From the NCBI RefSeq assembly GCF_964204865.1, contig NC_135253.1, forward strand, positions 20,832,001-20,896,000: DNA of 64,000 bases. Reading direction: 5' to 3'. Shown here one piece after another: positions 1 to 63,473 of the stretch (positions within the stretch are counted from its first letter, which is position 1; each line of letters begins with the position of its first letter). The notes below the pieces were generated by a model. The model saw only the letters and a list, made by a program, of their open reading frames with translations. It ran no database searches and was not told the origin of the DNA. Source of the DNA: Styela clava (lineage: Eukaryota). Position numbers and translations under genes: made by a program.

Positions 1-1038
1 GCGGGAATTCAATGGTAGATTCATTTTGGAGCATATTTTAATATCATCATTCCAACCACAAACCGAGTTTTAATTTGTCAGAGATAACAGTGTTTTTAAA
101 ACTTAATTTCCGACTTTACAAACTTAATTACATATAGAACCTTGGTTGTCACTGCTCAATAATGTATTGAGAAAAAAAAACTTGACTTTGAATATTCTAG
201 CTTTACTCATTATTCTACAATCCGGTAAGTGCATGATGAAATGCATCGACTAAATAAATGTACTTCTAGGTAAAGTTCATCTTATCAAGTCATTGGCATT
301 GATATAACTGTAACAAACCCCTTCTGAACAAAATGTTGGTGTTTTATTTCTTTCTTATCAAGTTTGCACTTTTAAGGTTGAATTTCACTATTTTATATAA
401 TATACATACGTATATGCATTGTCATTTATTAAATTATTTTGCTTCATGTCACTAAAATGGAATACTAAATTTCAGTTTTTGTGAGGTATTTCTCGTTATT
501 ATATTAGCTTTCTATCACTATTCATTATATTTATTTATGAGATAGTTGCCAATAAACAACTTTGAATTTTTTGTATGCGATTGCAAATGTTTCTTTTCCT
601 CGACATATTGTAGGTTAACTGTATTGAATAAAGTTCCATGCTTAAATTCCATGCACGTCAAACTCCTAGCTATGTACAAGAAGCCCTGACACTTCACTCT
701 TTGAACTCAAAGTTGAAAAAACTTTTTGGGTAAAAATTTTTAAAATTTTTTGTTGGGAATGGTAAGATGTTGTATATTGTGACTATTTTCATCGTTAGAA
801 TCTAAAATTCTGACTCTATGAAGTTTGAAAATACGACTCGACAGCTCTGTGTTATATGTATAGATAGCTACCTGCTTTTATTGCAATCATCTCGCCTCAC
901 CATGTCATGCTTACCTGTACAAGTTCCATGATCTATGCTTTGCAATTTTTATTCACTAACTTATATTAAAAAAGATTCATGACAGAATGTATTTGTACGA
1001 AACCAATGTGGCCAATTGTTGTTTCAAATGGAGTAGGG

Positions 1039-1347
1039 CAGGGCTACTCATATATTTTTACCGGAGATCCGCATACAAAACTTATTTTGGTCCGGTCTTT
1101 CCAGAAATTATATTTCGGCATCCTTAAACACGAATATTCTCGGCCGATTAATGATTATTAGCTAATCAAAATTGTTTATTATGGCCTTATAGTTCTTCTC
1201 ATACATATTTAATTCTATAAAAGTGATTTTTTAAACGGAAATTTCAAAAGTGGGGCTAATGATCTAAAATAAACAATTAGGCGCGGTCCGAATCGAATAC
1301 TCGAAAGATCCGGATTCGGAACGCGGTCCGCCAGTTGAGTAGGCCTG
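1039..1347. mobile_element. hAT-type MITE
   Basis: TIR cagggctactca / tgagtaggcctg; 8-bp TSD gagtaggg / gagtagga (7/8). Confidence 0.75.
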
Positions 1348-3494
1348 GAGTAGGAAATTGAGCGTGTGCTAAAATATATATAAAAGCTAGTAGGCTTGTT
1401 CCTCTTGCTTGTCTGAGATAATGTGACGGAATCTCAGTACTGTTGTGAATTGGTGTAGAATTATGTGTGCGAATCTGTGGTAGAATAATTATTCAAGAAG
1501 GATGAGTAAGAGGCTGATGCTTTTTGCTTTAAACAAGGCTCTATACACGCAGCCCTGATAGATAAAGTGCCATAATTTGAAAGACAGAATCTGTTTCTAT
1601 GAAGTGAAAACCTATTTTATCTCTCATCGTAATTTCTGTAAATTAATGGATAGGATAATACCAACAAATTCATCCCAAGAGAACAAGGGAAAAGCTGATA
1701 AAAAGGCTTGATCCTATGGCGAACCACGGCCTCTCATACGTTCCTCTGAAGTCGATGCTGATATGAGAATAGTTGGCCAGTTATTTGTTTCAGATGCATG
1801 GACTTGATGGTGGAGGAAGGCCTATGTTTCAATGAAATCCTTTTCGGTTGGAACATAGAGCGTTTTTGTGTTTATTTTTCCCGACTACAAAAGATCACAA
1901 ACTAAGTACCGTGTCTCCACGGAAATAAGAATTTTACAAATGGTTTTAATATAAGCCCCTCATCCCTAAAATAAAGAAAACCTAGTCGTTTTCTCAGTAA
2001 AAGCGTTTTATTTATAAGAAAATTGATATCGGTTTTCATATTCCGTATATGTGATAATCTAGTTATTATCTACTTTGTAATTTTGTTTTTGATAAATCAA
2101 AATAAAAGGCATCTCCGAAAAATAGGCCCTAGTGTTATTTTTCGAAAAGAACATTTGGGGAAATACAGTAGGTGTAGCACAGGGGTCTCAAAATCGCAGG
2201 ATGATGGTTTGTGGTCTCCTGATATGAAAGTTCAATGTTAGTGCGGTCCGCAAGTCACTCAGCTCAGTTAGCATAATTTTTTTATTTAATATAACATATG
2301 ATTACGTAGTCAGAACAAAATATTTTATCATTCATCCCCCGAAAGGCATAAGCGGTAACTAACCAGTACCGTACCTGTGGGCCTGATGTTCGATCGCGGA
2401 AAGCTTGAAATAAGTTAAAAATAATGTTTCATGATTTTTGACGTCACAAATATTAATTCTTAACATCTCCAGTTATTTTTATTTGTTCATTTATGTTTTC
2501 GACTTGTTTTGTGTTTAAAAGAAATTTCAGAATTATTCACATGCTCAAAGCATGTTGTAGTCTTATCAACTTCTCAAATTCAATTTGTAAAAGAATTTTT
2601 TTGCCAACTCACCTCGAATATATCCAGTGATGAGCTGGAAAATCGTATCAACCGGAACGACCCTAATTCGCAAAAATGTAATATATTTAAGTGTACTTAT
2701 GAAACAACACGACGCGGGCGTTTACAGAAATTTGTGCCTGTTTCAAGATCGAGCCGAAGAATTGCTGCAATGAAATATGAAGAAATGATCTGAAATATGT
2801 CTGTGTAAATTACAATAATATTCATAGCAACCCAATATAAATTATATTATTAGAAAGATAGAGGATGAATTTTCATGAAGTCAAAATTCAAGGAAACATC
2901 TATTACATGTTTCTACTGTCCTAATTGCGTGATGTGATGTGAAAAGAATTACGAATTATGCTGTAACAAAACATAAATTATTAACTAAGTTTACTAGAGA
3001 AACTAGACTTCTTGTACCATAATTTGATTTCAACAACAGGAACGCAAATGCAATAAAATAACCAACAACCGGAACGCCGTTCCGACTATATCCCACCACT
3101 GGGTTTATTCTTTTCTATCAGATAATTCCATTGTTTTTACTCAGAGTAACGACTACGAGTAATATGATATGGTAATTAAGCGAGGTGGTGGCTCAAAGCC
3201 CATATGAAAAAATATATTTTTCTCAGAGCGAAATTCCCCCACAAACTGTATTGAAGCCATGAAAAAAATTCCATACTCCCTGACGACGTATTTGGGTAAT
3301 TTATACCCAAGCGAAATCGTGTTTTTTAATACTGACACATTTAGAAAACACTCGAGAGCCAGAAATCGCCTTAGTCCTGATATATATAACTGCTAAACGT
3401 GTAGGCTCAAACTACACAATACCATCACAGGACTAAAAAACTTGTTATAGACAACAGTTTCACGATGATTTGATGGCGATAAAATAGAATTTAC

Positions 3495-29597: not shown

Positions 29598-29805
29598 CGC
29601 GCTCCAGAAGTATGTGTACCAATGGGGAGGCAACTAATTTTGTTCGCCTACTTTACATCAAGTTGTGTAAAGAGACGGAAGCCTATGGGCAGGTGGTATT
29701 TTCACTTGCCTATCACAAACAGTCCCCGAACTCGTAATAGAACTAAAATAATCGGAATAAAATTATGGCCTAACCCAAACCTGGTACACATACTACGGGA
29801 GTACC
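29598..29805 (+). mobile_element. Family A element
   Basis: Colinear copy ending 80 bp upstream of the gene 1 acceptor at 29885. Confidence 0.88.
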
Positions 29806-29970
29806 TAATTTTCTTATTACGGATTGAGTAAATTGAATCAACGTTGAAACATTGAAATTTATTCAACATTTTGTACTTTTTACAGCAATAATCATTTACT
29901 TTTATTTAATACTTGTGAGCTATGCAGCTTACTGGATAAATTGCGGCAAAATGGAAACATAAAACCAGAT

Positions 29971-30291
29971 ATGCATCCGATGCGCAAACTACTTTACCAC
30001 CGAGGAGTTGACGATCACATCGGGACTTACGTTACCGATTATGTCTACTCTGGAGTTTGTTTTCTACTTTGTATTCAACTAATTGTACGAATATATCATG
30101 AACGACGAAAAATGACGTCAGAGCAACGTATGACGTCTTCGTGTTGTAAAATTTCAAACTGGTTGCCATGGAACTGGCCAAAAGAGAAACCGACTGCTAT
30201 TGGTATTTCAACATATGCTGTTTTACTGTTCGGGTTTTCTAACTTTGTGATGATGTTGCTCGGAGGCTTAACACATCAGTTCTTGCAAACG
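29971..30291 (+). CDS. Gene 1 (7-TM CREST/DUF6962-like membrane protein), first coding exon
   Basis: Acceptor ttttgtactttttacag ends at 29885. The first in-frame ATG is at 29971 (alternative 29980). It encodes MHPMRKLL...YVTDYVYSGVCFLLCIQL...VMMLLGGLTHQFLQT (two hydrophobic helices). Donor ACG|gtgagt at 30292, phase 0. The frame is open back to the acceptor, so an upstream start cannot be excluded. Confidence 0.85.
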
Positions 30292-30682
30292 GTGAGTTGG
30301 ACTTAGTTTTATAATTTACTGGGCAAGTGAAATAATGTTCAAAATTTGCAGTGTTTCTACATACTTTTTGAATTCAAGCAACTAATCATGAATTCGTAAA
30401 CCAATTCATCTGTAAAGTTAAAAAATAATACTAAGCTTTTTCTATTGTGTTTCAAAATTTAGAAATCAAATATTCATATAGCAGTCTGTTTATAAATTTA
30501 TATACTCGGAAAAATGAATGTGTTGAAATTTTTGATCTTGTCTGCGAGATAGGTACCCGTATCGAAAATTAATATTATTCATTGGAAACAACATACAAAA
30601 CGTATTTCTTCATTTGATCTCCATATCGACATATCGAACTATGATTTTTTCATCTTCTTTTTTAATCAAAATTTACTTTAAG

Positions 30683-30799
30683 GTCGAACCCTACAATGAC
30701 GATATCAACAATTTATGGGATTGGTTAATAATCTGGAGAGTTGGCTCATCTTTTTCTGCCATTGTTTGTTTTAGTCTACTGATAATGACAGAACAGATG
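30683..30799 (+). CDS. Gene 1 coding exon 2
   Basis: tttaag|GTC ... ATG|gtaaat; 117 nt, phase 0-0; VEPYNDDINNLWDWLIIWRVGSSFSAIVCFSLLIMTEQM (one TM helix). Confidence 0.88.
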
Positions 30800-30926
30800 G
30801 TAAATATAATATGTACATATTTATGTAAAATGAAATACAAATGTGAAATTCAGTTCATTTTATTTGAAGAATATTGATCAATCCACATTTTAAAATAACG
30901 AAAATCTTGGAAACTATCTTCTATAT

Positions 30927-31177
30927 CAGGGGTGTGCAATGGGCGACCCACGGGCCATAACCCGTGGCCCGCCAAGACATTTAGTGCGACCCTTTTCCCC
31001 ATCGAGTATGAAGTCGCTCACACCAGTAATAATTTCTTTTTCTTTTTTTACTCCATTAAATCTTTTGCCGTTTTCCCCTGCTGATATCTTTATTACTGTA
31101 AAGCTGATCTATAGCCGTATTCTATTCTTTTATGTGTCCAGCTAAATGTCTAAAGTTGGTTATATGGCACAACCCTG
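30927..31177. mobile_element. hAT-type MITE (gene 1 intron)
   Basis: caggggtgtgca / ggcacaaccctg; TSD ttctatat / ttccatac (6/8). Confidence 0.7.
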
Positions 31178-31522
31178 TTCCATACGTATATTTCCTACAA
31201 AATTTTTCTAATAGTAATATTTAGTCCGTGTTATAAGTTCCCCGATTTAAGATGATGTAAGATGGTAAGCATGGATTTCATCTAAAATATTCAGCTTATA
31301 ATAAAAACATATTCAGTTTGGCGTCTGCGGTATCGAAATTTTACTAATTTCGCACCAATTATTAATATTTTTAATAATGATTTGGTTTTTATAGCGTGTT
31401 TTATGTCTCCGCTACAAAGTACATAAATGATTACCCAAAATATTCGTTTCACAGATTTTTTCGTACTTGAATTTTCGTAAATAATAATTGCATAATCCAA
31501 TTTTTTATTTTCGTTTTCGCAG

Positions 31523-31688
31523 ATAACTCAAGAAAGAGTTTTCCGAATCCCACACACAATTCGTGTTGGTTATTACATCATAATATTTGCAACAGTGGTG
31601 TGTTTCTTTGGAGTCAATTATATCCCCTTAACCGGCAAAGTGAAAGATCCGTTCAGTATAAGACAAACTTTTACTGTTACATTTGGAG
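31523..31688 (+). CDS. Gene 1 coding exon 3
   Basis: ttttcgcag|ATA ... GGAG|gtaaga; 166 nt, phase 0-1; ITQERVFRIPHTIRVGYYIIIFATVVCFFGVNYIPLTGKVKDPFSIRQTFTVTFG. It is absent from the ORF track because it has no start codon. Confidence 0.88.
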
Positions 31689-32619
31689 GTAAGAGTATGA
31701 TAAACACATCTATTGCCTTTATTTTATTCACTATGCTCACTGACGACAGTAGAGTTTTTTAAATGTAGATATTTCTGAACAAAAATGTTGTTTGACATAG
31801 TTTTACAGTTACATTTGGAGGTGAGAGCATGTTAAAGTATGTTGATGCTTCATTTTTATTGCCGCATACACTTTGGTACTCGAAGTATGCGTACCAAGAT
31901 GGCGGTTATTGCTTTTATATTATATACTATGCTTACATAGAGAAGCGGGATTGTTTTCTTGAACGTTTAAAATTTTGAACAAAAACATTGTGTGACAATG
32001 TTTTACTGTTACATTTTGGGGTACGAACACGTATGCTAATGCTTTGGTTTTATTACCACATAATTTTAACTTCCCTTTTTTTTATAACGTAGATATTTTT
32101 GAACAAAAACATTATTTATCGCGTACCTATATTGACAACATTTATTGGTTTTATACCATTAACTCTTCTTACTTTAAGACAGCGTTTTTTTTTGTTTTTT
32201 TTTAAGCAAAATGGCTCCTAAATAGAAAATTTAATCTGACTGCAATTGTAAAAAGAATTTTTTTGGTTACAATTGCTCCAGTAAATTACCTTAGCCCCAA
32301 AATAAAATTTTAAACTGCATTATCGCTGAAAGCGAACAAGCGTTGCAATCTATCGCTGATGCGCTAAAAGATATATAAAGTGTGCAAAAATCTGAGATTT
32401 GAGTAAAATACCGCCCACACGTATTTAAACAACACATTAAGTAATTATTAACCTAAGGTTGAGGGTGGGATTAGAAATTATTGAAATTTCAAATTTTTTG
32501 CGCAAACTTCTTTTTCAAACCTAACCAGACAATTACTAATTTTCTCTTTTTTGAGCGTTGGCGGTGGTGATTTTTGACGGGATTTTTGTACAAAAAAAGC
32601 GATCCGGTAGTATGTGTAA

Positions 32620-32838
32620 AAAAAGCGATCCGGTAGTATGTGTACCAAAATTTGGATAACAATTTTTTTTTCGCCTCTCTTACATCAAGTTGTGTAAAGA
32701 GACGGAAGCCTATGTACAGTGAGTATATTCACTTGGCCAACACAGACAGTCCCCAAACTCGCAATAGAACTAAAAAGAAGAAAACCGGAATAAAATTATG
32801 GCCCAACCCCAACCTGGTACACATACTACCGGAGTACC
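32620..32838 (+). mobile_element. Family A element (gene 1 intron)
   Basis: Colinear copy; its left end is part of a 26-bp tandem duplication (aaaaaagcgatccggtagtatgtgta x2). Confidence 0.85.
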
Positions 32839-32943
32839 CAAAATGATATACTTTTTAAGACTTACACAAGATGAATTATAACAAAACCCTTCTCCATCAT
32901 TGCGTTTTATTCCAATATAATTACAGATGTTACTTTATTGCAG

Positions 32944-33090
32944 TTGTAGTTCTTAACGGCATTGCTGCTCTGATTGTAGTTGTCTATCATTCCTGCCATA
33001 AAACCACAAGAAAGTCAACTCGCCCATACTCTACTGAATATGAAGGAAGATATTCTCCGTCGCATTCGCTGAATAGTAATTCTTTTTGTG
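32944..33090 (+). CDS. Gene 1 coding exon 4
   Basis: tttattgcag|TT ... TGTG|gtaagt; 147 nt, phase 1-1; VVVLNGIAALIVVVYHSCHKTTRKS...NSNSFC. It completes the TM helix begun in the previous exon. Confidence 0.85.
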
Positions 33091-33843
33091 GTAAGTAGAG
33101 GAATTGCAGATGAGTTATAGACTTAGTATACCTATGTTTCAGCTAAAACTTAAATTGAGCAGAGTAATGTATTAACAATTTAAATAAGTATAATCGTATC
33201 AGGAGACAATAAATAATTACACATCGTCAAATATGTTTACATATATGTAATTCACGCGAATATTCGATCTTTATCGCTATTCAAGTAATCGAGCCCTATG
33301 TTACATTCTAGACTTCATTAGGACATGTAATTTTGCATTATAGCCTTAATTTGGCTCAAACCTCATTCTCAACTATAATCAACGACGTGTAATTAAAATG
33401 AGTAAGTACTGCCTAAGCGGAAGGATTCCCATCATTTTCAAAATAATTATCATATACGCTCAAGTGACCGCTAGATCATAGATCGAGATAAAAGTGTGAA
33501 AATGCACTTGTGTATTCCACAAATGCCTATAGTTCTTTTACCAAAATTAATCTGATAGTTTCTGATAACAAACTACACAATCTATACTAATAGCTTTGGC
33601 AGGTGATGCTTATCCGAAAAGCAGAAACTTCCTTACAATTCAAAGGCTGCTTGGAGTTACACCTTTCTTTCTCTACTTTCGTACTTATTTTTTTTCGTGT
33701 CTTTCCTGTTATTCTTTTTTTCATTTTTTTTTTTCATTTTCGTTTGTTTTCTTCCAATTTTTACGAGGCAAATGCATATAGCTACTTTAAGAAAATAAGT
33801 AAATCATTTCTGGTATCTAACTATATATATCCTTATTTTTCAG

Positions 33844-33984
33844 ACGATCGGTCTATCTTGGGTTTTCTGTCTTGTAATGGATCAACTAATAGTCACCGTC
33901 AGGTCAGGGATGACAAACGCAAAAACCGCAGAAGATTGGAATTGTTTGCGATGACTTTAGCACCCTGGGTGTTCATAGTAGCGG
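33844..33984 (+). CDS. Gene 1 coding exon 5
   Basis: tattttttcag|AC ... GCGG|gtgaga; 141 nt, phase 1-1; DDRSILGF...RRRLELFAMTLAPWVFIVA. It aligns with the gene 2 exon at 63473-63342. Confidence 0.9.
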
Positions 33985-34514
33985 GTGAGATATCTTAAAA
34001 TTTATATGTTTTTTCAAACTTAAATTATGATCCAATACGCTTTACTTGGACGTTAACTTTAGTTATGATGTAAACTCAGAGGGTGCTACTCTGTTAAAAA
34101 AAATTAAAATGAAGTTTTTAATGGGTATTATTATGCACTTAAAACTGCTATATACAGAGAGTAAATTTCCATCTGATGTTTTGAAATAGTGTACTGCTAC
34201 AATGACATTGACTGTCCAGTCGTGAACGCAGCTTTGTTGTCGGAAAGAATTATACCATTTTTCAAAGATAATTTTAATTTTTATCTAAATGCTGGATAGA
34301 TTATTCAGAGATCTCTATTAAAATGCCGTATTTTTAAAGGATATTTCTACTATCTCATTATAAACGCCAAATATTTTTGTCAGAATGCATTCCAATCTGC
34401 TATTATTCATTTGTAAGAAACAATCATGCGAAAACTGATTGTAAGACATTCCAGAGAATTTTTCGACAAACGACATAATTACCTTAAACGTAGACCATTA
34501 TCCAGATTTCCGAA

Positions 34515-34800
34515 CTGACATGGGCTAACTACGACCTGGGAGCCAAATCCGACCCGTTTGGTTATTCAATCTGGCCCACCTAATGCTGCCACCAAACCAA
34601 AACCAATTTTTGATGTTTTAGCTAAAAAATAGTTGTAGGATTTTGTTGAGATTGCGATTAAATTTAGTTTTGGCTCGAGGCATATTGTTTTCCGTCATTG
34701 CTTTTGTAACACTGTAACTTCTTACGTCCCACTTACATGGCCCGTCAGGCTAGGTGGGCAAAATGTTTGGCACTTGGTCCAAAAACCTTGCCCACACCTG
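34515..34800 (+). mobile_element. hAT-type MITE, family D (gene 1 last intron)
   Basis: ctgacatgggctaactacg ... aaaaccttgcccacacctg; colinear with the other family D copies. Confidence 0.82.
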
Positions 34801-34879
34801 CTAGAATGTAGTTCATGGTATCTTCTCTATTGTATGACTCCAGATTGGTGCAAAAAAACTTTTTTTATTCTAATTTCAG

Positions 34880-35352
34880 GCGCAGCAAACCACTTCATGA
34901 AATCGACATGCGCCGATTCGGACGCTGCTCATATTGACCTTGGATGTCCTCTACCGGATTCATTTAACCACAACGCACTCATGCATGTAATGCAAATCGT
35001 TTCAGCGATTTCATTTTTTGTTGCGGAGAACATGGCGATCACAAGACGAAGTCAAATGGACGCTTCAAACATCAAAAGAGTGGCTACGTCATCGACAATT
35101 TATAATGACGTCATTAACAGTTCTGACATCACAGATGACAAAGATCGTGATGTAAAGAATAACAACAACAACAATAGAAATGATGACGTCATTCAAAACG
35201 TCATAAAACAACCAGACGTCATAATCATACCGGAGCTGGAGGAAACCGAAAGGATGAAAATACCAAAGTTTCCAACCAACCTAAATTATGAAACGTTATC
35301 AACTAATAATCGACATAGTTTGTATGATAATCTTTCCAACGTGCAGGTATAG
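34880..35352 (+). CDS. Gene 1 last coding exon
   Basis: taatttcag|GC, phase 1; GAANHFMKSTCADSD...GCPLPDSFNHNALMHVMQIVSAISFF...SLYDNLSNVQV-TAG. Strong protein similarity to the minus-strand ORF at 61940-62464. Exon lengths sum to 1365 nt = 454 aa + stop. Confidence 0.93.
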
Positions 35353-38191
35353 TTTCGTCCTTTCCGTCCATTTGTAGTGGTACGTATTTCTGCGATTGGT
35401 AAAAGGTTGGTAAGGTCTCTTAGGCTAATATTTTTTCCCCCTTTCCGTATTCCAAAAGCGCTGTTGAAAGCAGATTTCCTAGTATACGGTCTCTTGGGGG
35501 CAATCCTTGTGCTGTTAGCATGAGGTTTCATATAGTTTATCGAGATACTATTTTGAAAGGACAATTTACACATTATGCCAATGTGCACAAATCTATAAAT
35601 AACAAATATATGCAAAATTGCTGGAGTTAAAACCATGACAATGTTGCCATAATATGTTATTATTATATGAATTTTCTCTCTCAAAGTTCCAACATTTTAA
35701 TTTTTGTTTTATTTGTTGAATTATGTGCAATATATTAGTCATGTTTCCATTAGAAATCTTAAAATTATTTTATTTTTTTCTCGTGTAAGTAACGTACTCT
35801 AACTGTTTCTTGTATTTGAAATGGAGCATATTGAAAATTATTTTATTGGGTAGTGTTTTGAACATTTCTCACAATCTCGACCCAGTAGAATGGGTCAATT
35901 ATACCCATGGAACTACGAGAGAAGTTTCAACCAGAGGTCACTAGTTATACTGTAAGAAAAGAGTATTATTATGTTAGACTTACCATACCCCTATGTCGGA
36001 GTTATCTAAAAGCACAGTCCATGAATTGCATATGATATATAATAAAATAATAATATCTGGTGTTACTTGCCAAAATTTTAATTCAAACTTCAGTGGTATA
36101 TAAAATATTGACAATTCTATTTTCTCAATGAGTGACTTTGTAAGCCTATTTATAACAAGATCTTGCAAATCTGGTCAATATAAACAGGAAATAACAATAT
36201 AAATTTTTCGAATTTTTTAAATGTTTTTGCCATATTTGCGCAGACATTGAAAACATTGGCTAAATTTTTAATATTTGCTTCTCATCGGTTCAGCATTCGC
36301 TTACTATTATTAAAGTTTGATTTAGGCTTATTTGCCTCTACAAAAAACGCTATTTCATCGAACTAAATTAAACGTATTATAATGTTCCAGCATATGAAGT
36401 ATTATTTTATTATCATTACTAAATAAAATATCTATATTTTCCGCTTGTTTGAGTTTTTGTCGACTTTTGAATTGATACTACAGGCAGTGGCATCGCGCAA
36501 TTGTGCAACCGATAATACGTAGCAGAATTCGTAAGGACCGGGTAATTAAAATGGCTAGTTTGTTTACCGAAGCTATTCGTATATCTCAAATGAAACTCGA
36601 TACAGACTTGTTTTTAACATATTTATATTCGTTGCAAGTTTATCGCTATAAATTAACCGAATCATGTCAATCAAGAATTCTAGAAAAGATAAGATTTCAC
36701 ATTCAGGTCTGGCCAGTGTCTAAGCTCAATCTCTCACAGAATGAGAAATAATAAGTTTGATGACATATATATTTCGGCAATGTTTATCTGATTTAATAAT
36801 TAAATCTCGCCCAGTTGATGTAAAAATACAATTTAATTCTGATATATTTAAGCTACAAAACCCCACATAATTAAGCCTATTTGTCCATTTACAATATATC
36901 GCGTGCATAAAACAGAATTACGAAAAAATTCTTCATCATAAAATAGGGTAGATGCAAGCTATTCAGTGACACTGTCAAATTGTCAACAAACAACATTGAA
37001 AAATAATTTCTGCGTTCAGGTGCATTTTCAGAGTTAAAGTGTCAAAGGTCAACTTTGGTGTCGAACACACGCAGACTATCAGGTGTTCTATTTCACATAT
37101 AAGACATTGTTACTAAGCTTAAATTCAAAAAAGACATATGTTGTATTTACTCAGCTATACAAGGGTTAATATTTTAAATCGAACGAGATTTTGCGGTAAA
37201 ATACTTTTTGGGATAATCTTTCCCTTCTTTGTTGCGGTCTGAGCGTATTTGCCGATTTGTTGTGTGTTGACAAGCGTTTGTCGTCAGTTTCTCAGGTTTT
37301 GAGCGTAATGGTGCTAAGGATGTTTACGTAAGATTACAATTGGCTTATCCGAGCTAAGACTGGGGGCTGGGTGCCGTATAACAACTCTCCGCACTGAATG
37401 ATGGTATTTAAATTTTCATCGATTTGTTCCGATGAGATACCTGTCAAAATACTTGACCATTGTTCAAAATAAAAAACAGGATTTCGCAATTAAACACAAT
37501 GCATTATTGTCTACTATTTCATTCCTTTCACGCGATGCCACTTTTATATGTAAGCAGATGATTTTTTATAAATTTACAAAGAAATACAAGTCTTTTGCCT
37601 CATTTTGTTCTACATAAACTAAAAAACAAAACTCCTCACTAAATAACAGCGCGCCATTGTCTCATTTACCGATGGTTACTTTCAGCAAGGGATTAAACAA
37701 GTAGTCCTGGCTTGTGTATATCGAAGTTAAACATCTCAATGTGTTGAGCTGGTTTGAAGTTTATTGTTCATCTTTGAACGACGCTTATAAAAAACGATAA
37801 ATTTAAAATGATATCTTCGGATATGTTAGCTTTCGAATTTAAATACGTAATCAAAAACGTAACGTAAGTAATATTTTATATTAGTAGTATTTATAATATT
37901 TGTATTTTGAAGCACAAATTATTTTATATAATAAACTTAAATGCTTTTGATAGGTGTTCAGCTCTGCAATAACAAAAAGACAGTTTTTCGCCATTAAGTT
38001 CAACCAACGACATGCAAGAATAGATATTTCGAAGTTGTTTGTCATAACAAATATCACAACCGTGACAAAAGAAGCGTGTCAATCGTACCCAATCGCCGAC
38101 TTAAAATGAATACTTGAAATTGATAAAAGCAATGCATTTGTGACCTTATTTACTTTCGTCGAAAATGGCCATTTGTATGCGTTTATTGCTG

Positions 38192-56047: not shown

Positions 56048-57215
56048 TAAAATATTTCAGATTTATAAGTGAATAATTCAAAATATTTTCTAAAATTCCT
56101 GTGTATGAACATATCCCTATCTATCCAAAATAAATTGACAAATGGCCTCGTAACATAAAAGATTGTAATGATGGGTCGAAAATATAGTTAACTTCGAAAT
56201 AGAGACTACATTTAATTGTACATACAATTTCGCAATTACCAAAGCGCTTTCCCCCCGCTTTTGTGTAATATATAAAAAGTTGTTTTCAGTTACATTATCG
56301 TAGCCCGTAGCCTATAATGTGATATATGTAATCTAATCTTAGATAAAGTAGATAATGATAGTGCTACATATCATATATTAAAGTACCTAATTTGTCATAT
56401 CATGTCTCACATGAACAATTTATGCGGCGGAAATATGAACCGGTAATATTTCGCTAGTCGCTACCACAAAAATTCAAACCAGCGAATGATACTATGATTA
56501 CAGATATAGTACCACACTGCAAACCCTTGTTTACCGATCGTGTTGGTGCGAACTATCGTATATTTATACAGGTAAAATATTTCATATTTATAAGTAAATA
56601 ATACATTTTTTTTTTAAATTTCTGTGTATGAACATATTCTTATACCATTCGAAATATATGATGCTTAATGTTCAGGTCTCGTAACATAAAATCTTATAAT
56701 GGTCGGTCGAAAATGTAGTTTACTTCAAAGCAAAATCTGGTGCTCACGAAGTATGTGCACCAAGATGGCGCTACCTGAACCCCAACCTGGAACACATACA
56801 ATGTTCAGGTTGTGCGCCATCTTCGTGCACATACTTCTGGAGGTCCCTAAAAACTTTCTTAAATTGTTCATTCATTTTTCCAATTGCCAAAACGCTAGTT
56901 TCTCCTCGCTTATGTAGAACCTTGTCAAAACCCTAGTTTTCAGTTACATTGGCGCCATACTCCCAGGCAATTCTTCAATTCTTCGAGGCCTATAAGATAA
57001 TAAACACAATCTAATCTCAGATAAGGTAGATAATGATAAAGTTACGTATCATATATTAAAGTACTTGCATTTATCATATCATGTCTCACATGAACAATTT
57101 ATGCGGCGGAAATATGAACCGGTAATATTTCGCTAGTCGCTACCACAAAAATTCAAGAATGATACTATGATTACAGAAACAGTACCATACTGTTCACTTC
57201 TGTGTTGGCGCAAAC
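56048..57215. repeat. Tandem duplication (about 520-bp unit; second copy carries a MITE)
   Basis: 56048-56555 aligns with 56572-57215. Confidence 0.88.
56739..56847. mobile_element. Family B MITE (short form)
   Basis: Palindromic; absent from the paralogous duplicated segment near 56200 (empty site). Confidence 0.85.
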
Positions 57216-60106: not shown

Positions 60107-60331
60107 GGCGTTCCCGTAGTATGTGAACCAAGATGGCAGACACAGGAACGTGGTACGTGTACCAGGTTAGGGTTAGGCCCTAATTTTCGTTATTTTAGTC
60201 TTAATACGAGTTCAGAGACTAGCAAAGTGACCCCCGTAGTATTTGTACCTGGAATTATGACCTAACCCCAACTTGGTACACATGCTACTTGCCGGTGTCC
60301 GCCATCTTGGTTCACATACTACGGGAGTACT
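60107..60331. mobile_element. Family B MITE (long form)
   Basis: About 70-bp TIRs; TSD cgcgaatc / cacgaatg (6/8). Confidence 0.88.
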
Positions 60332-61939
60332 CACGAATGCTATAAAGACATACTCAATCAGAGCAATACAAAATGAATGATGTTTCGTAGCTTGATTGCT
60401 ATTTCCTCAGAATAAAAACTCGTTTACAACTGAACTCCGTTCATTGAGAACAGCAGATTAATTTAACATACGAATAAATGAGATGCGCCGCAACAATTAG
60501 GAGTTGTCGCGCTACCCATCATTAAAGTAATCACATTATGTCACAATACATAAAAAACTTTTAATGTCTTTTGAATATTTAGTTTGATGGGGTTGAGTCT
60601 TATTTTATTGATTTACATTAAAAGTAACGCCAGTTTATTGTGCTAATATTCATGTATCAGGGACTGTCTGTTACGTTCAAAGCAAAAATAAAGAAAAAAA
60701 ACGAAAAAAGTGAAACCAATATTACGCGGTTTTATTTTTCGCAACGCTTCGATATATAAACGAGATTTTAAAAAATCTAAAAAAACACTAGGTCGGTTTT
60801 ATAATCGCCCTCTGTAATAATCTTCATTAACAGCATTTCTTCCTCTACTTTGTTTTTGGGCATTGGAGAACTAGATATAGCCCGTGGCCCCCTTCCAAAA
60901 GCTTTTAGCACTCGTGGCTCCCTTGTTTATCATTTCAGGGGCATTAATAGTGTTATTTTCAATGGTAGAATCTAAATCCCAGTATGTTCACAATACATGC
61001 TCAACAAAGGGATGACACCCTGTGAAATAACCTCATCGGGCAATGAATGAAACAAGGGAAAACACAGTATTCTTGTAAAGGGAAAAGAATCAGTTTTGCG
61101 CTTAGCATGTTGGTTCCCTACAACTGCCTTGTGGCCCTCTTGGTGGGCGACGGGACCCCAGTTAGGAACCGCTCTTGTAGAGTTTACTAACAACTGCGCT
61201 AGACCGTCCATCGCCCATACAGCACTGGAAGTACCATTCCAAGACAAAAGTCGCCTGAGAAATATAGAAACCACCAAGATATAAATAAATCAAAACATAC
61301 TTTGATATCACCACTTTATTTATATATTGAAAGAATCACTTGGAACAATTTAAATAAAAAGAAATTTACGCTTATTGTAAGGTTTATAATAGGAATTATG
61401 TAGTAGGCTAAGTCGTAAATTTCATTTTATAATAGGTCTAATTAAGGTAAACGAAACTGTTCATTTGGTACCACAGCAAGAAGAAAAAGTACGTACGTTA
61501 ACACCTTTCCGTGAAGAAAAAATCTTCTAGGATTTGGTTATAGAAATATTTTGAAATATTGCACGCACTAAATAAAAGTATCTAGGAAATAATATAGAAC
61601 AGAAAGAAGAAAATAAAACAGATTTGGAACTATCAAAGCATTTAAGAAACTTTATATTGTGTAAAATTTATGACGTCATATCGCTTATGACATCATCAAA
61701 ATTTCAACCATAGTTGTTATGTACATATATGCTATTTTTATACCAATGTTATCATTATTAATTAACTGCTTAATTTTACACAATAACAATAAATTTAAAC
61801 AAATTTTAGTTCACTTCCTATAAAGCAAAATGCACAATGCACATGAATAAATTAACAATTACAAATTATGACGTCGTATTTGTACGTAAGAATAATATAG
61901 TCGACGTCTTTGGCAAAGTATGCATAGAAGTCACAATAC

Positions 61940-62409
61940 CTATACATCGAAATGATTGTCATAAAGGCTATGTCTGTTGTCCTTCACAGGTATTCGTGAA
62001 TCGAGAGAAAGTGGAAACTTGGGGTCTGGTGTTGAATCTTTTACTTTAGATTCTGTGTCCGTCATGTTTTTATTTTCAGTATTTCCACTGCTGGTTTTGC
62101 AGACAACGTCATCTCCCCTATTATTATTGCTACTTTCGTTCTGAGAAGGTTTACTTGAAATCTCGCAGCTCGTCATTGCGTCGTTGTATATCGTAGACGA
62201 AGTTACTGTTCTTTTTATATTGGTACTATAAGTACATTTTCGTCTTGTAATCGCTATATTTTCTCCAAGAAAAAATAAGCACGCTGACACAATTTGTATT
62301 ACGTGCATGAGAGCGTTATGGTTGAATGAATCCGGTAGAGGGCATCCGAGCTCACTATAAGCATTGTCCGAATCAGCGCATTTCGATTTCAAAAAGTGAT
62401 TGGTTGCCC
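61940..62409 (-). CDS. Gene 2 (paralog of gene 1), last coding exon
   Basis: Minus-strand ttatattttag|GG, phase 1, at the same intron position as in gene 1; GATNHFLKSKCADSD...GCPLPDSFNHNALMHVIQIVSACLFF...SLYDNHFDV-TAG. Confidence 0.93.
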
Positions 62410-62714
62410 CTAAAATATAAATTAATATGATAAGTTTGCAATGCACAAACAAAATTGTAAACACTAAAGCAACTTAGTCAGTATTGACATCTGTTGTTGC
62501 ATGGTGAGATTATTTTTATTTTATGAGAAGCTCATTCACGCCTTTTTATTCAAACTAGGCCCTTTGCGAAGAGACACTGGCATCTGACTATATGTACGGA
62601 CCTACTATGAAATACTGATGCTACAAATACTAATACCAAGTTGCAAGCGTAGTATTGTCCAAGAAAAGCAATTTTCTCTTCAATAGTGACAAATTGAACA
62701 AAAACTACTGAGTG

Positions 62715-63090
62715 AAGCAATGCATTTCTTCTATATAAGTCTTTTTTGCTATTTGATTGATCATTTAAAAATAGCAATGCTTTGTTGCTATGGGAATGGC
62801 AAATGATAATTACCTAAAAAGGTCACAATATGCGTGTTTTGACAGTTTATTCTAGTCCTGTTTATCATTTGATAGAACATTAAAAAATTAGCAATGGTCG
62901 TTTGCTATTGAAATGGTGATTATTGATTACTTAAAATGATCACAATGTGCATGCATTGACAATTTATTTGAGTTCTTTTTAGCATTTGATAAACATTTTA
63001 TAATAGCAATGCTGTTTTGGTGTTAAAACGCTATCATTCATCACTTTGATAAGGTCACAGTGTGCGTATTTGACAATTTATTCAAAGTCA
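62715..63090. repeat. Degenerate tandem repeat (about 117-bp period) in the last intron of gene 2
   Basis: tagcaatg...tcaca.tgtgc...tgaca.tttatt recurring near 62772, 62889 and 63004. Confidence 0.7.
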
Positions 63091-63341
63091 TAAATGTCAT
63101 ATTGCGTCTCCATTTTGAAGAAATTACTATACCCCGCATGTAGTATTTATATTTCAGAGTACGTATTCCTGTTAAAACTTGACGTAAAACGTTTTCAATA
63201 AATAGGGCATCGTTCAAGTTAATTCAATCCGACTTACGGTTTGCATAATTAGTCCTCCATCAAAAATATATTTTTTTTTGTGAGTATATTCGTTTAGGAG
63301 TATATTAAGATACCAAAAATGAGATTTTATATGAAATTTAC

Positions 63342-63473
63342 CTGCAATGACAAAAGTCCATGGAGCTATGCACTTCACAGCTAATTCAAATCTTCTGTAC
63401 GTGATGTCATCCTCTTCGGCGTAACCGGATATAACGTTGCAACAAGAAAATTTACTTTCTTTTGAATTGTTTT
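63342..63473 (-). CDS. Gene 2 penultimate coding exon (upstream exons not identified inside the window)
   Basis: Minus-strand ctttgctttag|AA ... GCAG|gtaaat; 132 nt, phase 1-1; NNSKESKFSCCNVISGYAEEDDITYRRFELAVKCIAPWTFVIA, which matches gene 1 RRRLELFAMTLAPWVFIVA. Confidence 0.9.

What the first reader, a model, noticed from the sequence alone, without database searches (positions are those of the whole stretch)
29971..35352. Uncharacterised 7-TM CREST/DUF6962-like metal-binding membrane protein as an intron-containing animal gene
Seen: six exons with canonical GT-AG sites and consistent phases (0,0,1,1,1) splice into a 454-aa ORF with seven hydrophobic segments. TDY sits in TM1, GGLTH ends TM2 (30262-30276), and C-x12-CPLPDSFNHNALMH precedes TM7 (HxxxH at 34969-34986). 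Established: CREST-superfamily proteins (alkaline ceramidases, PAQR/AdipoR, Per1/PGAP3, SID-1, TMEM8/myomaker) are 7-TM proteins that bind Zn via an SxxxH His and a C-terminal HxxxH. Inference: this protein supplies the three His but has Gly where CREST enzymes have Ser. The TDY / GGxxH / FNHNxxxH signature matches my recollection of the mostly bacterial DUF6962 family, not any named vertebrate CREST gene. It may be an unstudied animal branch of intramembrane lipid hydrolases or lipid receptors, retained patchily or acquired by horizontal transfer.
Basis: partly seen in the sequence, partly recalled or inferred. Interest (0 to 1): 0.8.

Follow-up and report, generated by a model that had tools for sequence, protein, structure and literature searches.

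The report
Tunicate DUF6962 seven-helix membrane protein gene
This is a real, conserved sea-squirt (Styela clava) gene for an uncharacterised seven-helix membrane protein of the DUF6962 family, with a conserved His/Asp/Asn cluster on the outer membrane face; it looks like a metal-dependent lipid enzyme, but kinship to the CREST hydrolases is not shown.

Summary
The six-exon GT-AG model at 29971-35352 (+) is correct. It matches, junction for junction, NCBI's 454-aa "uncharacterized protein LOC120327053 [Styela clava]". The gene has a convergent paralog whose last two exons lie in the window (61940-63473, -). A third paralog lies about 50 kb further on, and a distant intronless paralog is on another contig.

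The DUF6962 call is supported. Twenty of 21 family members hit Pfam PF22285. Paralog B, a Styela-like transcript and the Ciona ortholog score above the curated cut-off; gene A itself scores 22.7 against 27 bits.

Named relatives are all tunicates (Styela, Ciona, Phallusia, Clavelina) or a foraminiferan. Two motif scans of 185,579 prokaryotic species found none, so bacterial transfer is unsupported.

CREST membership is not shown:
- No member hits a CREST Pfam family.
- hhalign against a PAQR profile gives at most 3% probability.
- Predicted 7TM models match ACER3 (Z 15) no better than GPCRs.
- The TM2 Ser and the TM3 Asp are absent.
- The TM7 motif is H-x4-H, not HxxxH.

The conserved residues all sit on the predicted outer face (N-out, C-in). 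My best guess is an exoplasmic metal or lipid site. I could not test RNA junctions or His geometry. The finding has moderate interest.

The parts
29971..30291 (+). Gene A exon 1 (107 codons, phase 0): N-terminal GVDDxIGTYxTDY motif, TM1, cytoplasmic loop, TM2 ending in GGLTH(Q)
   Evidence: maps to P0069 residues 1-107
30683..30799 (+). Gene A exon 2 (39 codons): VEPY...W motif and TM3
   Evidence: P0069 108-146
31523..31688 (+). Gene A exon 3 (ends in phase 1): TM4 and the start of TM5
   Evidence: P0069 147-201
32944..33090 (+). Gene A exon 4: rest of TM5 and the start of the long K/R-rich cytoplasmic loop
   Evidence: P0069 203-250
33844..33984 (+). Gene A exon 5: rest of the cytoplasmic loop and most of TM6
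   Evidence: P0069 252-297
34880..35352 (+). Gene A exon 6 with stop: C-x11-CPLPDSFNHNALMH motif (His codons at 34969-34971 and 34984-34986), TM7, and a ~100-aa low-confidence cytoplasmic tail
61940..62409 (-). Paralog B (LOC120326743) last exon, convergent with gene A; it carries the same CPLPDSFNHNALMH motif
63342..63473 (-). Paralog B exon 5; exons 1-4 lie beyond the window end, at G000:C4:20896001-20899366

Best explanation
Shown: 29971-35352 (+) is Styela clava gene LOC120327053. It is one of three clustered paralogs on this contig, and a distant intronless paralog sits on another contig. They encode seven-helix membrane proteins of the uncharacterised Pfam family DUF6962. The family has two old tunicate subfamilies and relatives in marine protists. 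Both A and B are under purifying selection. Inferred topology: N-terminus outside or luminal, C-terminus cytoplasmic. Every family-wide conserved residue lies at the outer ends of TM1, TM2, TM3 and TM7 or in the TM6-7 loop. On the 454-aa protein these are D14, T19, Y20, T22, D23, Y24, G99, H102, W125, C308, C320, P321, F326, N327, H328, N329 and H333. Inferred mechanism (not shown): these residues form one buried polar pocket at the exoplasmic leaflet. The pocket binds a divalent metal (most likely Zn2+) through H102, H328 and/or H333 and an acidic TM1 residue. It hydrolyses or binds an outer-leaflet or luminal lipid, and the Cys pair forms a disulfide that fixes the TM6-7 loop over it. This would work like the N-out/C-in CREST enzymes (ACER1/2, PGAP3, TMEM8A). 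Homology to CREST is not demonstrated.
For: The gene model equals the NCBI protein. Paralogs are collinear exon by exon. dN/dS between A and B is 0.15. A 452-aa uninterrupted ORF sits on a 2.2-kb Logan contig (P0003) with the same junctions, which looks like a spliced transcript of a close relative. DUF6962 is hit by 20 of 21 members, and four score over the cut-off. AlphaFold models have pTM 0.71 and 0.82 with seven helices at pLDDT above 90. Loops on one side carry 36 K/R against 5 on the other, and the conserved Cys pair is on the K/R-poor side. Invariant and nearly invariant columns are listed. ACER3 ranks among the top natural structural matches for both models (Z 15.4 and 15.0). The only stretch hhalign aligns to PAQR is the TM7 His motif. 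The CREST definition and the existence of N-out CREST enzymes with outer active sites come from PMC3146951 and PMC13562381.
Against: There is no statistically significant sequence or profile link to any CREST family. Structural matches to ACER3/AdipoR2 tie with many GPCRs and designed 7TM bundles. The CREST Ser is Gly, the TM3 Asp is not conserved, and the TM7 histidines are spaced i, i+5. Gene A itself scores below the Pfam cut-off (22.7 against 27 bits).
Confidence: 0.5

Rival explanations
1. It is a true, very divergent member of the CREST superfamily (common descent) and acts as a Zn2+-dependent lipid amidase or esterase. The TM1 Asp and a Gly replace the canonical TM3 Asp and TM2 Ser.
For: It has seven TM helices with a His at the end of TM2 and two His at the start of TM7, the same positions as the CREST motifs. 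ACER3 is the best or near-best natural structural match for two independent models. The sole hhalign local alignment pairs H328/H333 with the PAQR HxxxH.
Against: hhalign probability is 0.2-3%. None of 21 members hits HlyIII, Ceramidase, Per1, SID-1 or TMEM8 Pfam models, even at E up to 10. Three of the five defining residues or spacings are not met. GPCRs score equally in fold search.
Confidence: 0.22
2. It is a non-enzymatic seven-helix receptor or sensor with GPCR-like N-out/C-in topology. The conserved outer pocket binds a ligand, and the Styela-specific cytoplasmic tail carries sorting or signalling tyrosine motifs.
For: N-out/C-in topology is like that of GPCRs. Fold matches to Ste2, class C and class A GPCRs have Z 13-15. 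One member gives a weak 7tm_1 hit at E 0.014. The tail motifs TSSTIYND and NRHSLYDN are conserved in A, B and P0003.
Against: The long tail is absent from paralog C, Ciona, Phallusia and Clavelina and from the protist members, so it is not a family feature. The invariant His/Asp/Asn cluster at the membrane interface is more typical of metal or catalytic sites than of GPCR ligand pockets. No GPCR family is hit significantly.
Confidence: 0.2
3. The tunicate genes were acquired by horizontal transfer from bacteria.
For: Among annotated animals, only tunicates were named among the hits I looked up. Tunicates are known for at least one bacterial gene acquisition, cellulose synthase (established knowledge). 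The compact 198-position Pfam model suggests short, possibly prokaryotic, members.
Against: Scans of 185,579 prokaryotic species genomes with both signature motifs found no relative. Only 54 hits turned up in 1.84 billion representatives, and none is named as bacterial. The closest outgroups are a foraminiferan and eukaryote-like metagenome contigs. Two deep subfamilies occur in Ciona, Clavelina and Styela, so the family predates the tunicate radiation. The genes carry five introns.
Confidence: 0.05
4. It is a decaying duplicate or annotation artefact without function.
For: It is one of several recent paralogs. Gene A scores below the Pfam cut-off. No reads were laid.
Against: The frame is intact across six exons, all motif residues are kept, and dN/dS is 0.15 against B. 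Nine runs guessed to be RNA hold 10-17% of the locus words, close to the exon share of 24%.
Confidence: 0.03

Closest known systems
Pfam DUF6962 (PF22285), family of unknown function
   Same: It is the only family hit consistently (20 of 21 homologs). Matches cover both the N-terminal part of the profile (positions 2-154) and the C-terminal part (147-192). Paralog B, P0003, Ciona LOC100183876 and P0052 score above the gathering cut-off.
   Different: Gene A itself scores 22.7 bits, below the cut-off of 27. The tunicate proteins are 330-650 aa against a 198-position model, with long cytoplasmic loops and tails. No function is known for any member, and no paper in the library mentions the family.
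Alkaline ceramidase ACER3 (PDB 6YXH/6G7O) and the N-out CREST enzymes ACER1/2, PGAP3 and TMEM8A
   Same: Both are seven-helix bundles (Z 15.0-15.4, 236-244 residues aligned). Both have a His at the end of TM2, two His at the start of TM7, and a conserved acidic N-terminal/TM1 motif next to them. ACER3 has its D19WCExN24 Ca2+ site and a disulfide to the TM6 end. The predicted outer-face site resembles that of ACER1/2, PGAP3 and TMEM8.
   Different: rmsd is 5.2-6.0 A and sequence identity 6-10%. There is no profile similarity. Gly replaces Ser, there is no conserved TM3 Asp, and the His spacing is H-x4-H. The Cys pair lies within the TM6-7 loop rather than linking the N-terminus to TM6.
PAQR/AdipoR (Pfam HlyIII, PF03006)
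   Same: The local motif resemblance is P..FN..(S)HN.LWHV against CPLP..FNHNALMHV at the start of TM7. AdipoR2 matches the gene A model at Z 14.6.
   Different: hhalign probability is 0.2-3%. AdipoR2 is not in the top 50 for the Ciona model. AdipoRs are N-in/C-out, the opposite of the predicted topology here. Styela has its own ordinary PAQR3-like gene.
G-protein-coupled receptors (Ste2, class C and class A 7TM domains)
   Same: They share the overall 7TM arrangement and N-out/C-in topology, with Z 13-15.
   Different: There is no significant sequence match. The conserved residues here form a His/Asp/Asn/Tyr cluster at the outer membrane interface, which is not a GPCR signature.

Membership tests
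Pfam DUF6962 (PF22285) | Whole-protein score at or above the curated gathering cut-off (27 bits) for the protein of this gene | tested here: not met
   P0069 (gene A protein, from NCBI) scores 22.7 bits, E 1.2e-4. Exon 6 alone scores 15.4 bits.
Pfam DUF6962 (PF22285) | Close homologs score above the cut-off, and the family as a whole hits this model and no other | tested here: met
   Scores are 33.9 bits for paralog B, 33.8 for P0003, 41.7 for Ciona P0009 and 44.7 for P0052. Twenty of 21 members match, and no other family is matched by more than two members.
Pfam DUF6962 (PF22285) | The match extends over both halves of the profile, not only one motif | tested here: met
   P0009 residues 17-152 match profile positions 2-119. 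P0035 residues 20-183 match 3-154. C-terminal matches fall at profile positions 147-192 in many members.
CREST superfamily | Seven core transmembrane segments | tested here: met
   Hydropathy and AlphaFold helices at 17-56, 79-108, 115-149, 157-177, 193-224, 282-308 and 328-378.
CREST superfamily | SxxxH at the end of TM2 | tested here: not met
   His102 is invariant, but the -4 position is Gly or Ala (GGLTH). Ser appears in no short-clade member. The definition is from PMC3146951.
CREST superfamily | Conserved Asp at the start of TM3 | tested here: not met
   The Asp of WDW occurs only in Styela A, B and P0003. Other members have T, S or A (W[T/S]WLIVWR). Only W125 is nearly invariant.
CREST superfamily | HxxxH at the start of TM7 | tested here: not met
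   The motif is FNHNALMH, that is H328-x4-H333. N329 and H333 have the i, i+4 spacing.
CREST superfamily | Significant sequence or profile similarity to a recognised CREST family | tested here: not met
   hhalign of A5 and A4 against a 19-sequence PAQR alignment gives probability 0.2% and 3.0%, and global mode gives nothing. No HlyIII, Ceramidase, Per1, SID-1 or TMEM8 hits appear in 21 members at E up to 10. The PDB profile search finds no CREST chain. Ceramidase, Per1, TMEM8 and SID-1 profiles were not tested by hhalign.
CREST superfamily | Structural similarity to solved CREST proteins that stands above other 7TM folds | tested here: inconclusive
   ACER3 gives Z 15.4 and 15.0, and AdipoR2 gives Z 14.6 for one model only. 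Designed GPCR-like folds give 15.4-16.8, Ste2 15.1-15.2 and many GPCRs 13-15.
CREST superfamily | Three His converge on a Zn2+ site; hydrolase activity | not testable with these tools
GPCR (rhodopsin-like and others) | Significant match to a GPCR family profile | tested here: not met
   Only one of 21 members gives a 7tm_1 hit, at E 0.014.

The most novel reading that the evidence does not exclude
DUF6962 is an unrecognised, highly divergent branch of CREST-like intramembrane metallo-hydrolases with a re-wired outer-leaflet site: a TM1 Asp/Tyr motif, a TM2 His and a TM7 NHNxxxH. It would be an old eukaryotic gene family that, among annotated animals, survives only in tunicates as two subfamilies. 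There it would process a luminal or cell-surface lipid or lipid anchor.
Probability: 0.2. Interest if true: 0.65.

Novelty: new member of a known kind. Interest (0 to 1): 0.38.

Why it matters
If the conserved outer-face His/Asp/Asn cluster is a metal-dependent catalytic site, DUF6962 would add a new family of intramembrane lipid-processing enzymes. Its animal distribution is restricted, as far as I looked: tunicates only among the named hits. Ciona, which has one ortholog of each subfamily, would be a tractable model for knockouts. As it stands, the gene is an already annotated 'uncharacterized protein' in an already catalogued family of unknown function. The value lies in a sharper hypothesis about the residues, their side of the membrane and the family's distribution, not in a new kind of system.

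Tried and rejected
Exon peptides were searched separately, and whole-protein work used the NCBI protein P0069, which a search returned.
- A MAFFT alignment of exon fragments against full-length paralog D was scrambled and was discarded.
- The protein-atlas search could not read the sequences.
- The genome search 'relatives' is unavailable for this genome, so bona fide prokaryotic DUF6962 members could not be fetched. The family's overall taxonomic spread therefore remains unverified.
- phmmer and hmmsearch against PDB sequences gave only spurious hits.
- NCBIfam gave nothing.
- Foldseek against PDB gave only E of 0.01 or worse, as generic 7TM hits.
- hhalign in global mode gave nothing.
- Literature searches for DUF6962, PF22285 and the LOC identifiers returned no papers.
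- Names were looked up for 30 of the 54 hits of the large search. The other 24, mostly short fragments, were not.


Full report
**Observation**

The region 29971-35352 (+) contains six exons: 29971-30291, 30683-30799, 31523-31688, 32944-33090, 33844-33984 and 34880-35352. Every acceptor ends in AG after a pyrimidine-rich tract, and every donor begins with GT(A/G)AG-like sequence. The phases are 0,0,1,1,1 and the sum is 1365 nt, or 454 codons plus TAG.

Each in-frame piece was analysed on its own. A profile search later returned NCBI's own protein for this gene, P0069 = 'uncharacterized protein LOC120327053 [Styela clava]', 454 aa. The six pieces map onto it contiguously at residues 1-107, 108-146, 147-201, 203-250, 252-297 and 299-454, with the three split codons between them. 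Identity is 438/451.

- 34969-34986 encodes H-N-A-L-M-H, which is H-x4-H rather than HxxxH.
- The two cysteines are C-x11-C.

**Genome and paralogs**

The genome is Styela clava, a tunicate. The window is G000:C4:20832001-20896000.
- Paralog B (LOC120326743, P0068, 449 aa) lies tail-to-tail with gene A. Its exons 6 and 5 are at window 61940-62409 and 63342-63473 (-), and the rest runs past the window end.
- Paralog C (LOC120326649, P0002, 363 aa) lies about 50 kb beyond B.
- Paralog D (LOC120342790, P0001) is distant and intronless, on contig C3.

A and B are collinear exon by exon. Over 271 ungapped codons dN/dS is 0.15, so both copies are constrained. Exon 1 has much lower synonymous divergence (pS 0.23) than exons 2, 3 and 6 (0.56-0.85), which suggests gene conversion of the first exon.

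**Relatives elsewhere**

I searched 1.84 billion representative proteins with a profile of exon 1 from A, B, C and the N-terminus of D. It found only 54 proteins at E of 0.001 or better. I looked up names for 30 of them. The named ones are:
- Styela clava;
- Ciona intestinalis (LOC100183876 and LOC100178977);
- Phallusia mammillata;
- Clavelina lepadiformis;
- the foraminiferan Bolivina argentea.

The rest are unnamed Logan, ENA or JGI sequences.

P0003 is a 452-aa uninterrupted ORF on a 2.2-kb Logan contig. It is 64% identical to A overall and has the same junction residues. It is best read as a spliced transcript of a close relative.

A maximum-likelihood tree gives three well-supported groups:
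- a 'short' tunicate clade (Styela A, B and C, Ciona, Phallusia, Clavelina);
- a 'long', mostly single-ORF clade (Styela D, Ciona LOC100178977, Clavelina);
- a protist clade (Bolivina plus ENA sequences).

Both tunicate clades occur in all three ascidian orders sampled, so the family predates the ascidian radiation.

I scanned one genome from each of 185,579 bacterial and archaeal species for DD[SHE]x[GA]TY[VI]TD and for CP[LF][PWH]xxFNHN. Neither scan found a relative. A metagenome scan found 12 loci. The ones I inspected look eukaryotic: exon-like pieces, transcript-length contigs, or a neighbour resembling a eukaryotic prolyl hydroxylase. I could not retrieve bona fide prokaryotic DUF6962 members. 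So I cannot say how bacterial the Pfam family is, but nothing here points to a bacterial donor.

**Family assignment**

Exon by exon, only exon 6 touches a family: DUF6962 at E 0.019. With whole natural proteins the picture is clear:

| Protein | DUF6962 score (cut-off 27 bits) |
|---|---|
| Paralog B (P0068) | 33.9 |
| P0003 | 33.8 |
| Ciona P0009 | 41.7 |
| P0052 | 44.7 |
| Gene A (P0069) | 22.7 (E 1.2e-4) |

Twenty of 21 aligned members hit DUF6962, and no other family recurs. Matches cover profile positions 2-154 in some members and 147-192 in others, so the relation spans the whole domain. No paper in the library mentions DUF6962, PF22285 or these LOC identifiers.

**CREST test**

CREST is defined by four features (PMC3146951; PMC13562381): seven core TMs, SxxxH at the end of TM2, an Asp at the start of TM3, and HxxxH at the start of TM7. 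Here:
- Seven TMs are present.
- The TM2 His (H102) is invariant, but the Ser position is Gly.
- The Asp of 'WDW' at the TM3 start exists only in the Styela A/B lineage and is T, S or A elsewhere.
- The TM7 histidines are spaced i, i+5.

No CREST Pfam model is hit by any of the 21 members, even at E up to 10. I also built a 19-sequence PAQR alignment, starting from Styela's own intronless PAQR3-like gene. Comparing it with the family by hhalign gives probabilities of 0.2% and 3.0%. The only aligned stretch pairs CPLPxxFN-HNALMH with PERxxPGxF(D/N)xxGxSH(Q/N)xWH. That resemblance is suggestive but not significant.

AlphaFold models are confident 7TM bundles: the gene A protein (P0069) has pTM 0.71 and the Ciona ortholog 0.82. 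In an all-against-representatives structural search:
- ACER3 scores Z 15.4 (rmsd 6.0, 244 residues aligned) and Z 15.0 (rmsd 5.2, 236 aligned).
- AdipoR2 scores Z 14.6 for one model.
- Designed GPCR-like folds score 15.4-16.8, Ste2 scores 15.1-15.2, and dozens of GPCRs score 13-15.
- Foldseek gives only E of 0.01 or worse.

The fold is a generic 7TM bundle and cannot decide the question. CREST membership is therefore not established, and three defining features fail.

**Likely mode of action**

Loops on one side of the membrane hold 36 Lys/Arg against 5 on the other, and the conserved Cys pair lies on the K/R-poor side. This predicts N-out/C-in.

All family-wide conserved residues lie on the outer side:
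- D14 and T19/Y20/T22/D23/Y24 at the start of TM1;
- G99 and H102 at the end of TM2;
- W125 at the start of TM3;
- C308...C320-P321 and F326/N327/H328/N329/H333 in the TM6-7 loop and at the start of TM7.

The cytoplasmic loops and tails are variable and modelled with low confidence.

A buried cluster of His, Asp, Asn and Tyr at the membrane interface, capped by a probable disulfide, is most simply read as a metal-binding or catalytic pocket. It would act on an outer-leaflet or luminal lipid. That is functionally analogous to the N-out CREST enzymes ACER1/2, PGAP3 and TMEM8A. It also recalls ACER3's acidic N-terminal Ca2+ motif packed against its Zn site. This is inference. I could not measure His-His distances because coordinates are not exposed. 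A ligand-binding receptor role is a live alternative.

**Expression**

Nine runs guessed to be RNA, from three studies, hold 10-17% of the sampled words of 29800-35500. Junctions are therefore supported only by the NCBI model, by paralog collinearity and by the P0003 transcript-like contig.

**Verdict**

The CREST and metal-hydrolase reading is a reasonable but unproven analogy. The bacterial-transfer idea is unsupported.

The gene and family are already in public databases as uncharacterised. This report adds three things:
- the restricted distribution (tunicates and protists among named hits);
- the two-subfamily structure;
- a specific outer-face residue cluster to test.

Noticed in passing
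window 29971-30291 vs L009:6547-6867 (paralog B exon 1): Exon 1 of paralogs A and B is 91% identical in protein with synonymous divergence pS 0.23. Exons 2, 3 and 6 show pS 0.56-0.85. This pattern suggests gene conversion confined to the first exon.
   Followed up: partly
window 29600-29830 and 32620-32850; partial copies near 56690-56930 and 60190-60340: A dispersed repeat of about 230 bp has terminal inverted repeats (CCGGTAGTATGTGTACC ... GGTACACATACTACCGG) and looks like a MITE. One copy sits just upstream of gene A and another in intron 3.
   Followed up: partly
window 35060-35352 (gene A tail); window 61940-62200 (-) (paralog B tail): The ~100-aa cytoplasmic tail is specific to the Styela A/B lineage. 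TSSTIYND, PKFP and NRHSLYDN are conserved in A, B and the P0003 transcript. They fit YxxPhi sorting signals as well as the ITSM/ITIM patterns noted in s1-819965. The C-terminal residues differ (VQV, FDV, SHA), so a PDZ ligand is not conserved.
   Followed up: partly
L011:2510-3892 (-) = G000:C3, LOC120342790: This is a distant intronless paralog (461-477 aa) with TNY instead of TDY and GFVHH instead of GGLTH. It belongs to a 'long' subfamily also present in Ciona (LOC100178977) and Clavelina, whose members have large inserted loops.
   Followed up: partly
L012:1315-2232 (+) = G000:C1:15662317-15663234: An intronless PAQR3-like gene (305 aa) carries the full canonical CREST residues: SAGYH, a TM3 Asp and HNLWH. 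I used it as the CREST comparator.
   Followed up: yes
L035:363-800 (+) and 1027-3138 (-), JGI metagenome contig Ga0115005_10008924: A protist-like contig carries a C-terminal DUF6962-type exon (CPLPKGFNHNAAYH) next to a 703-aa ORF that, by eye only, resembles a prolyl 4-hydroxylase-type 2OG oxygenase. The organism is unknown.
   Followed up: no
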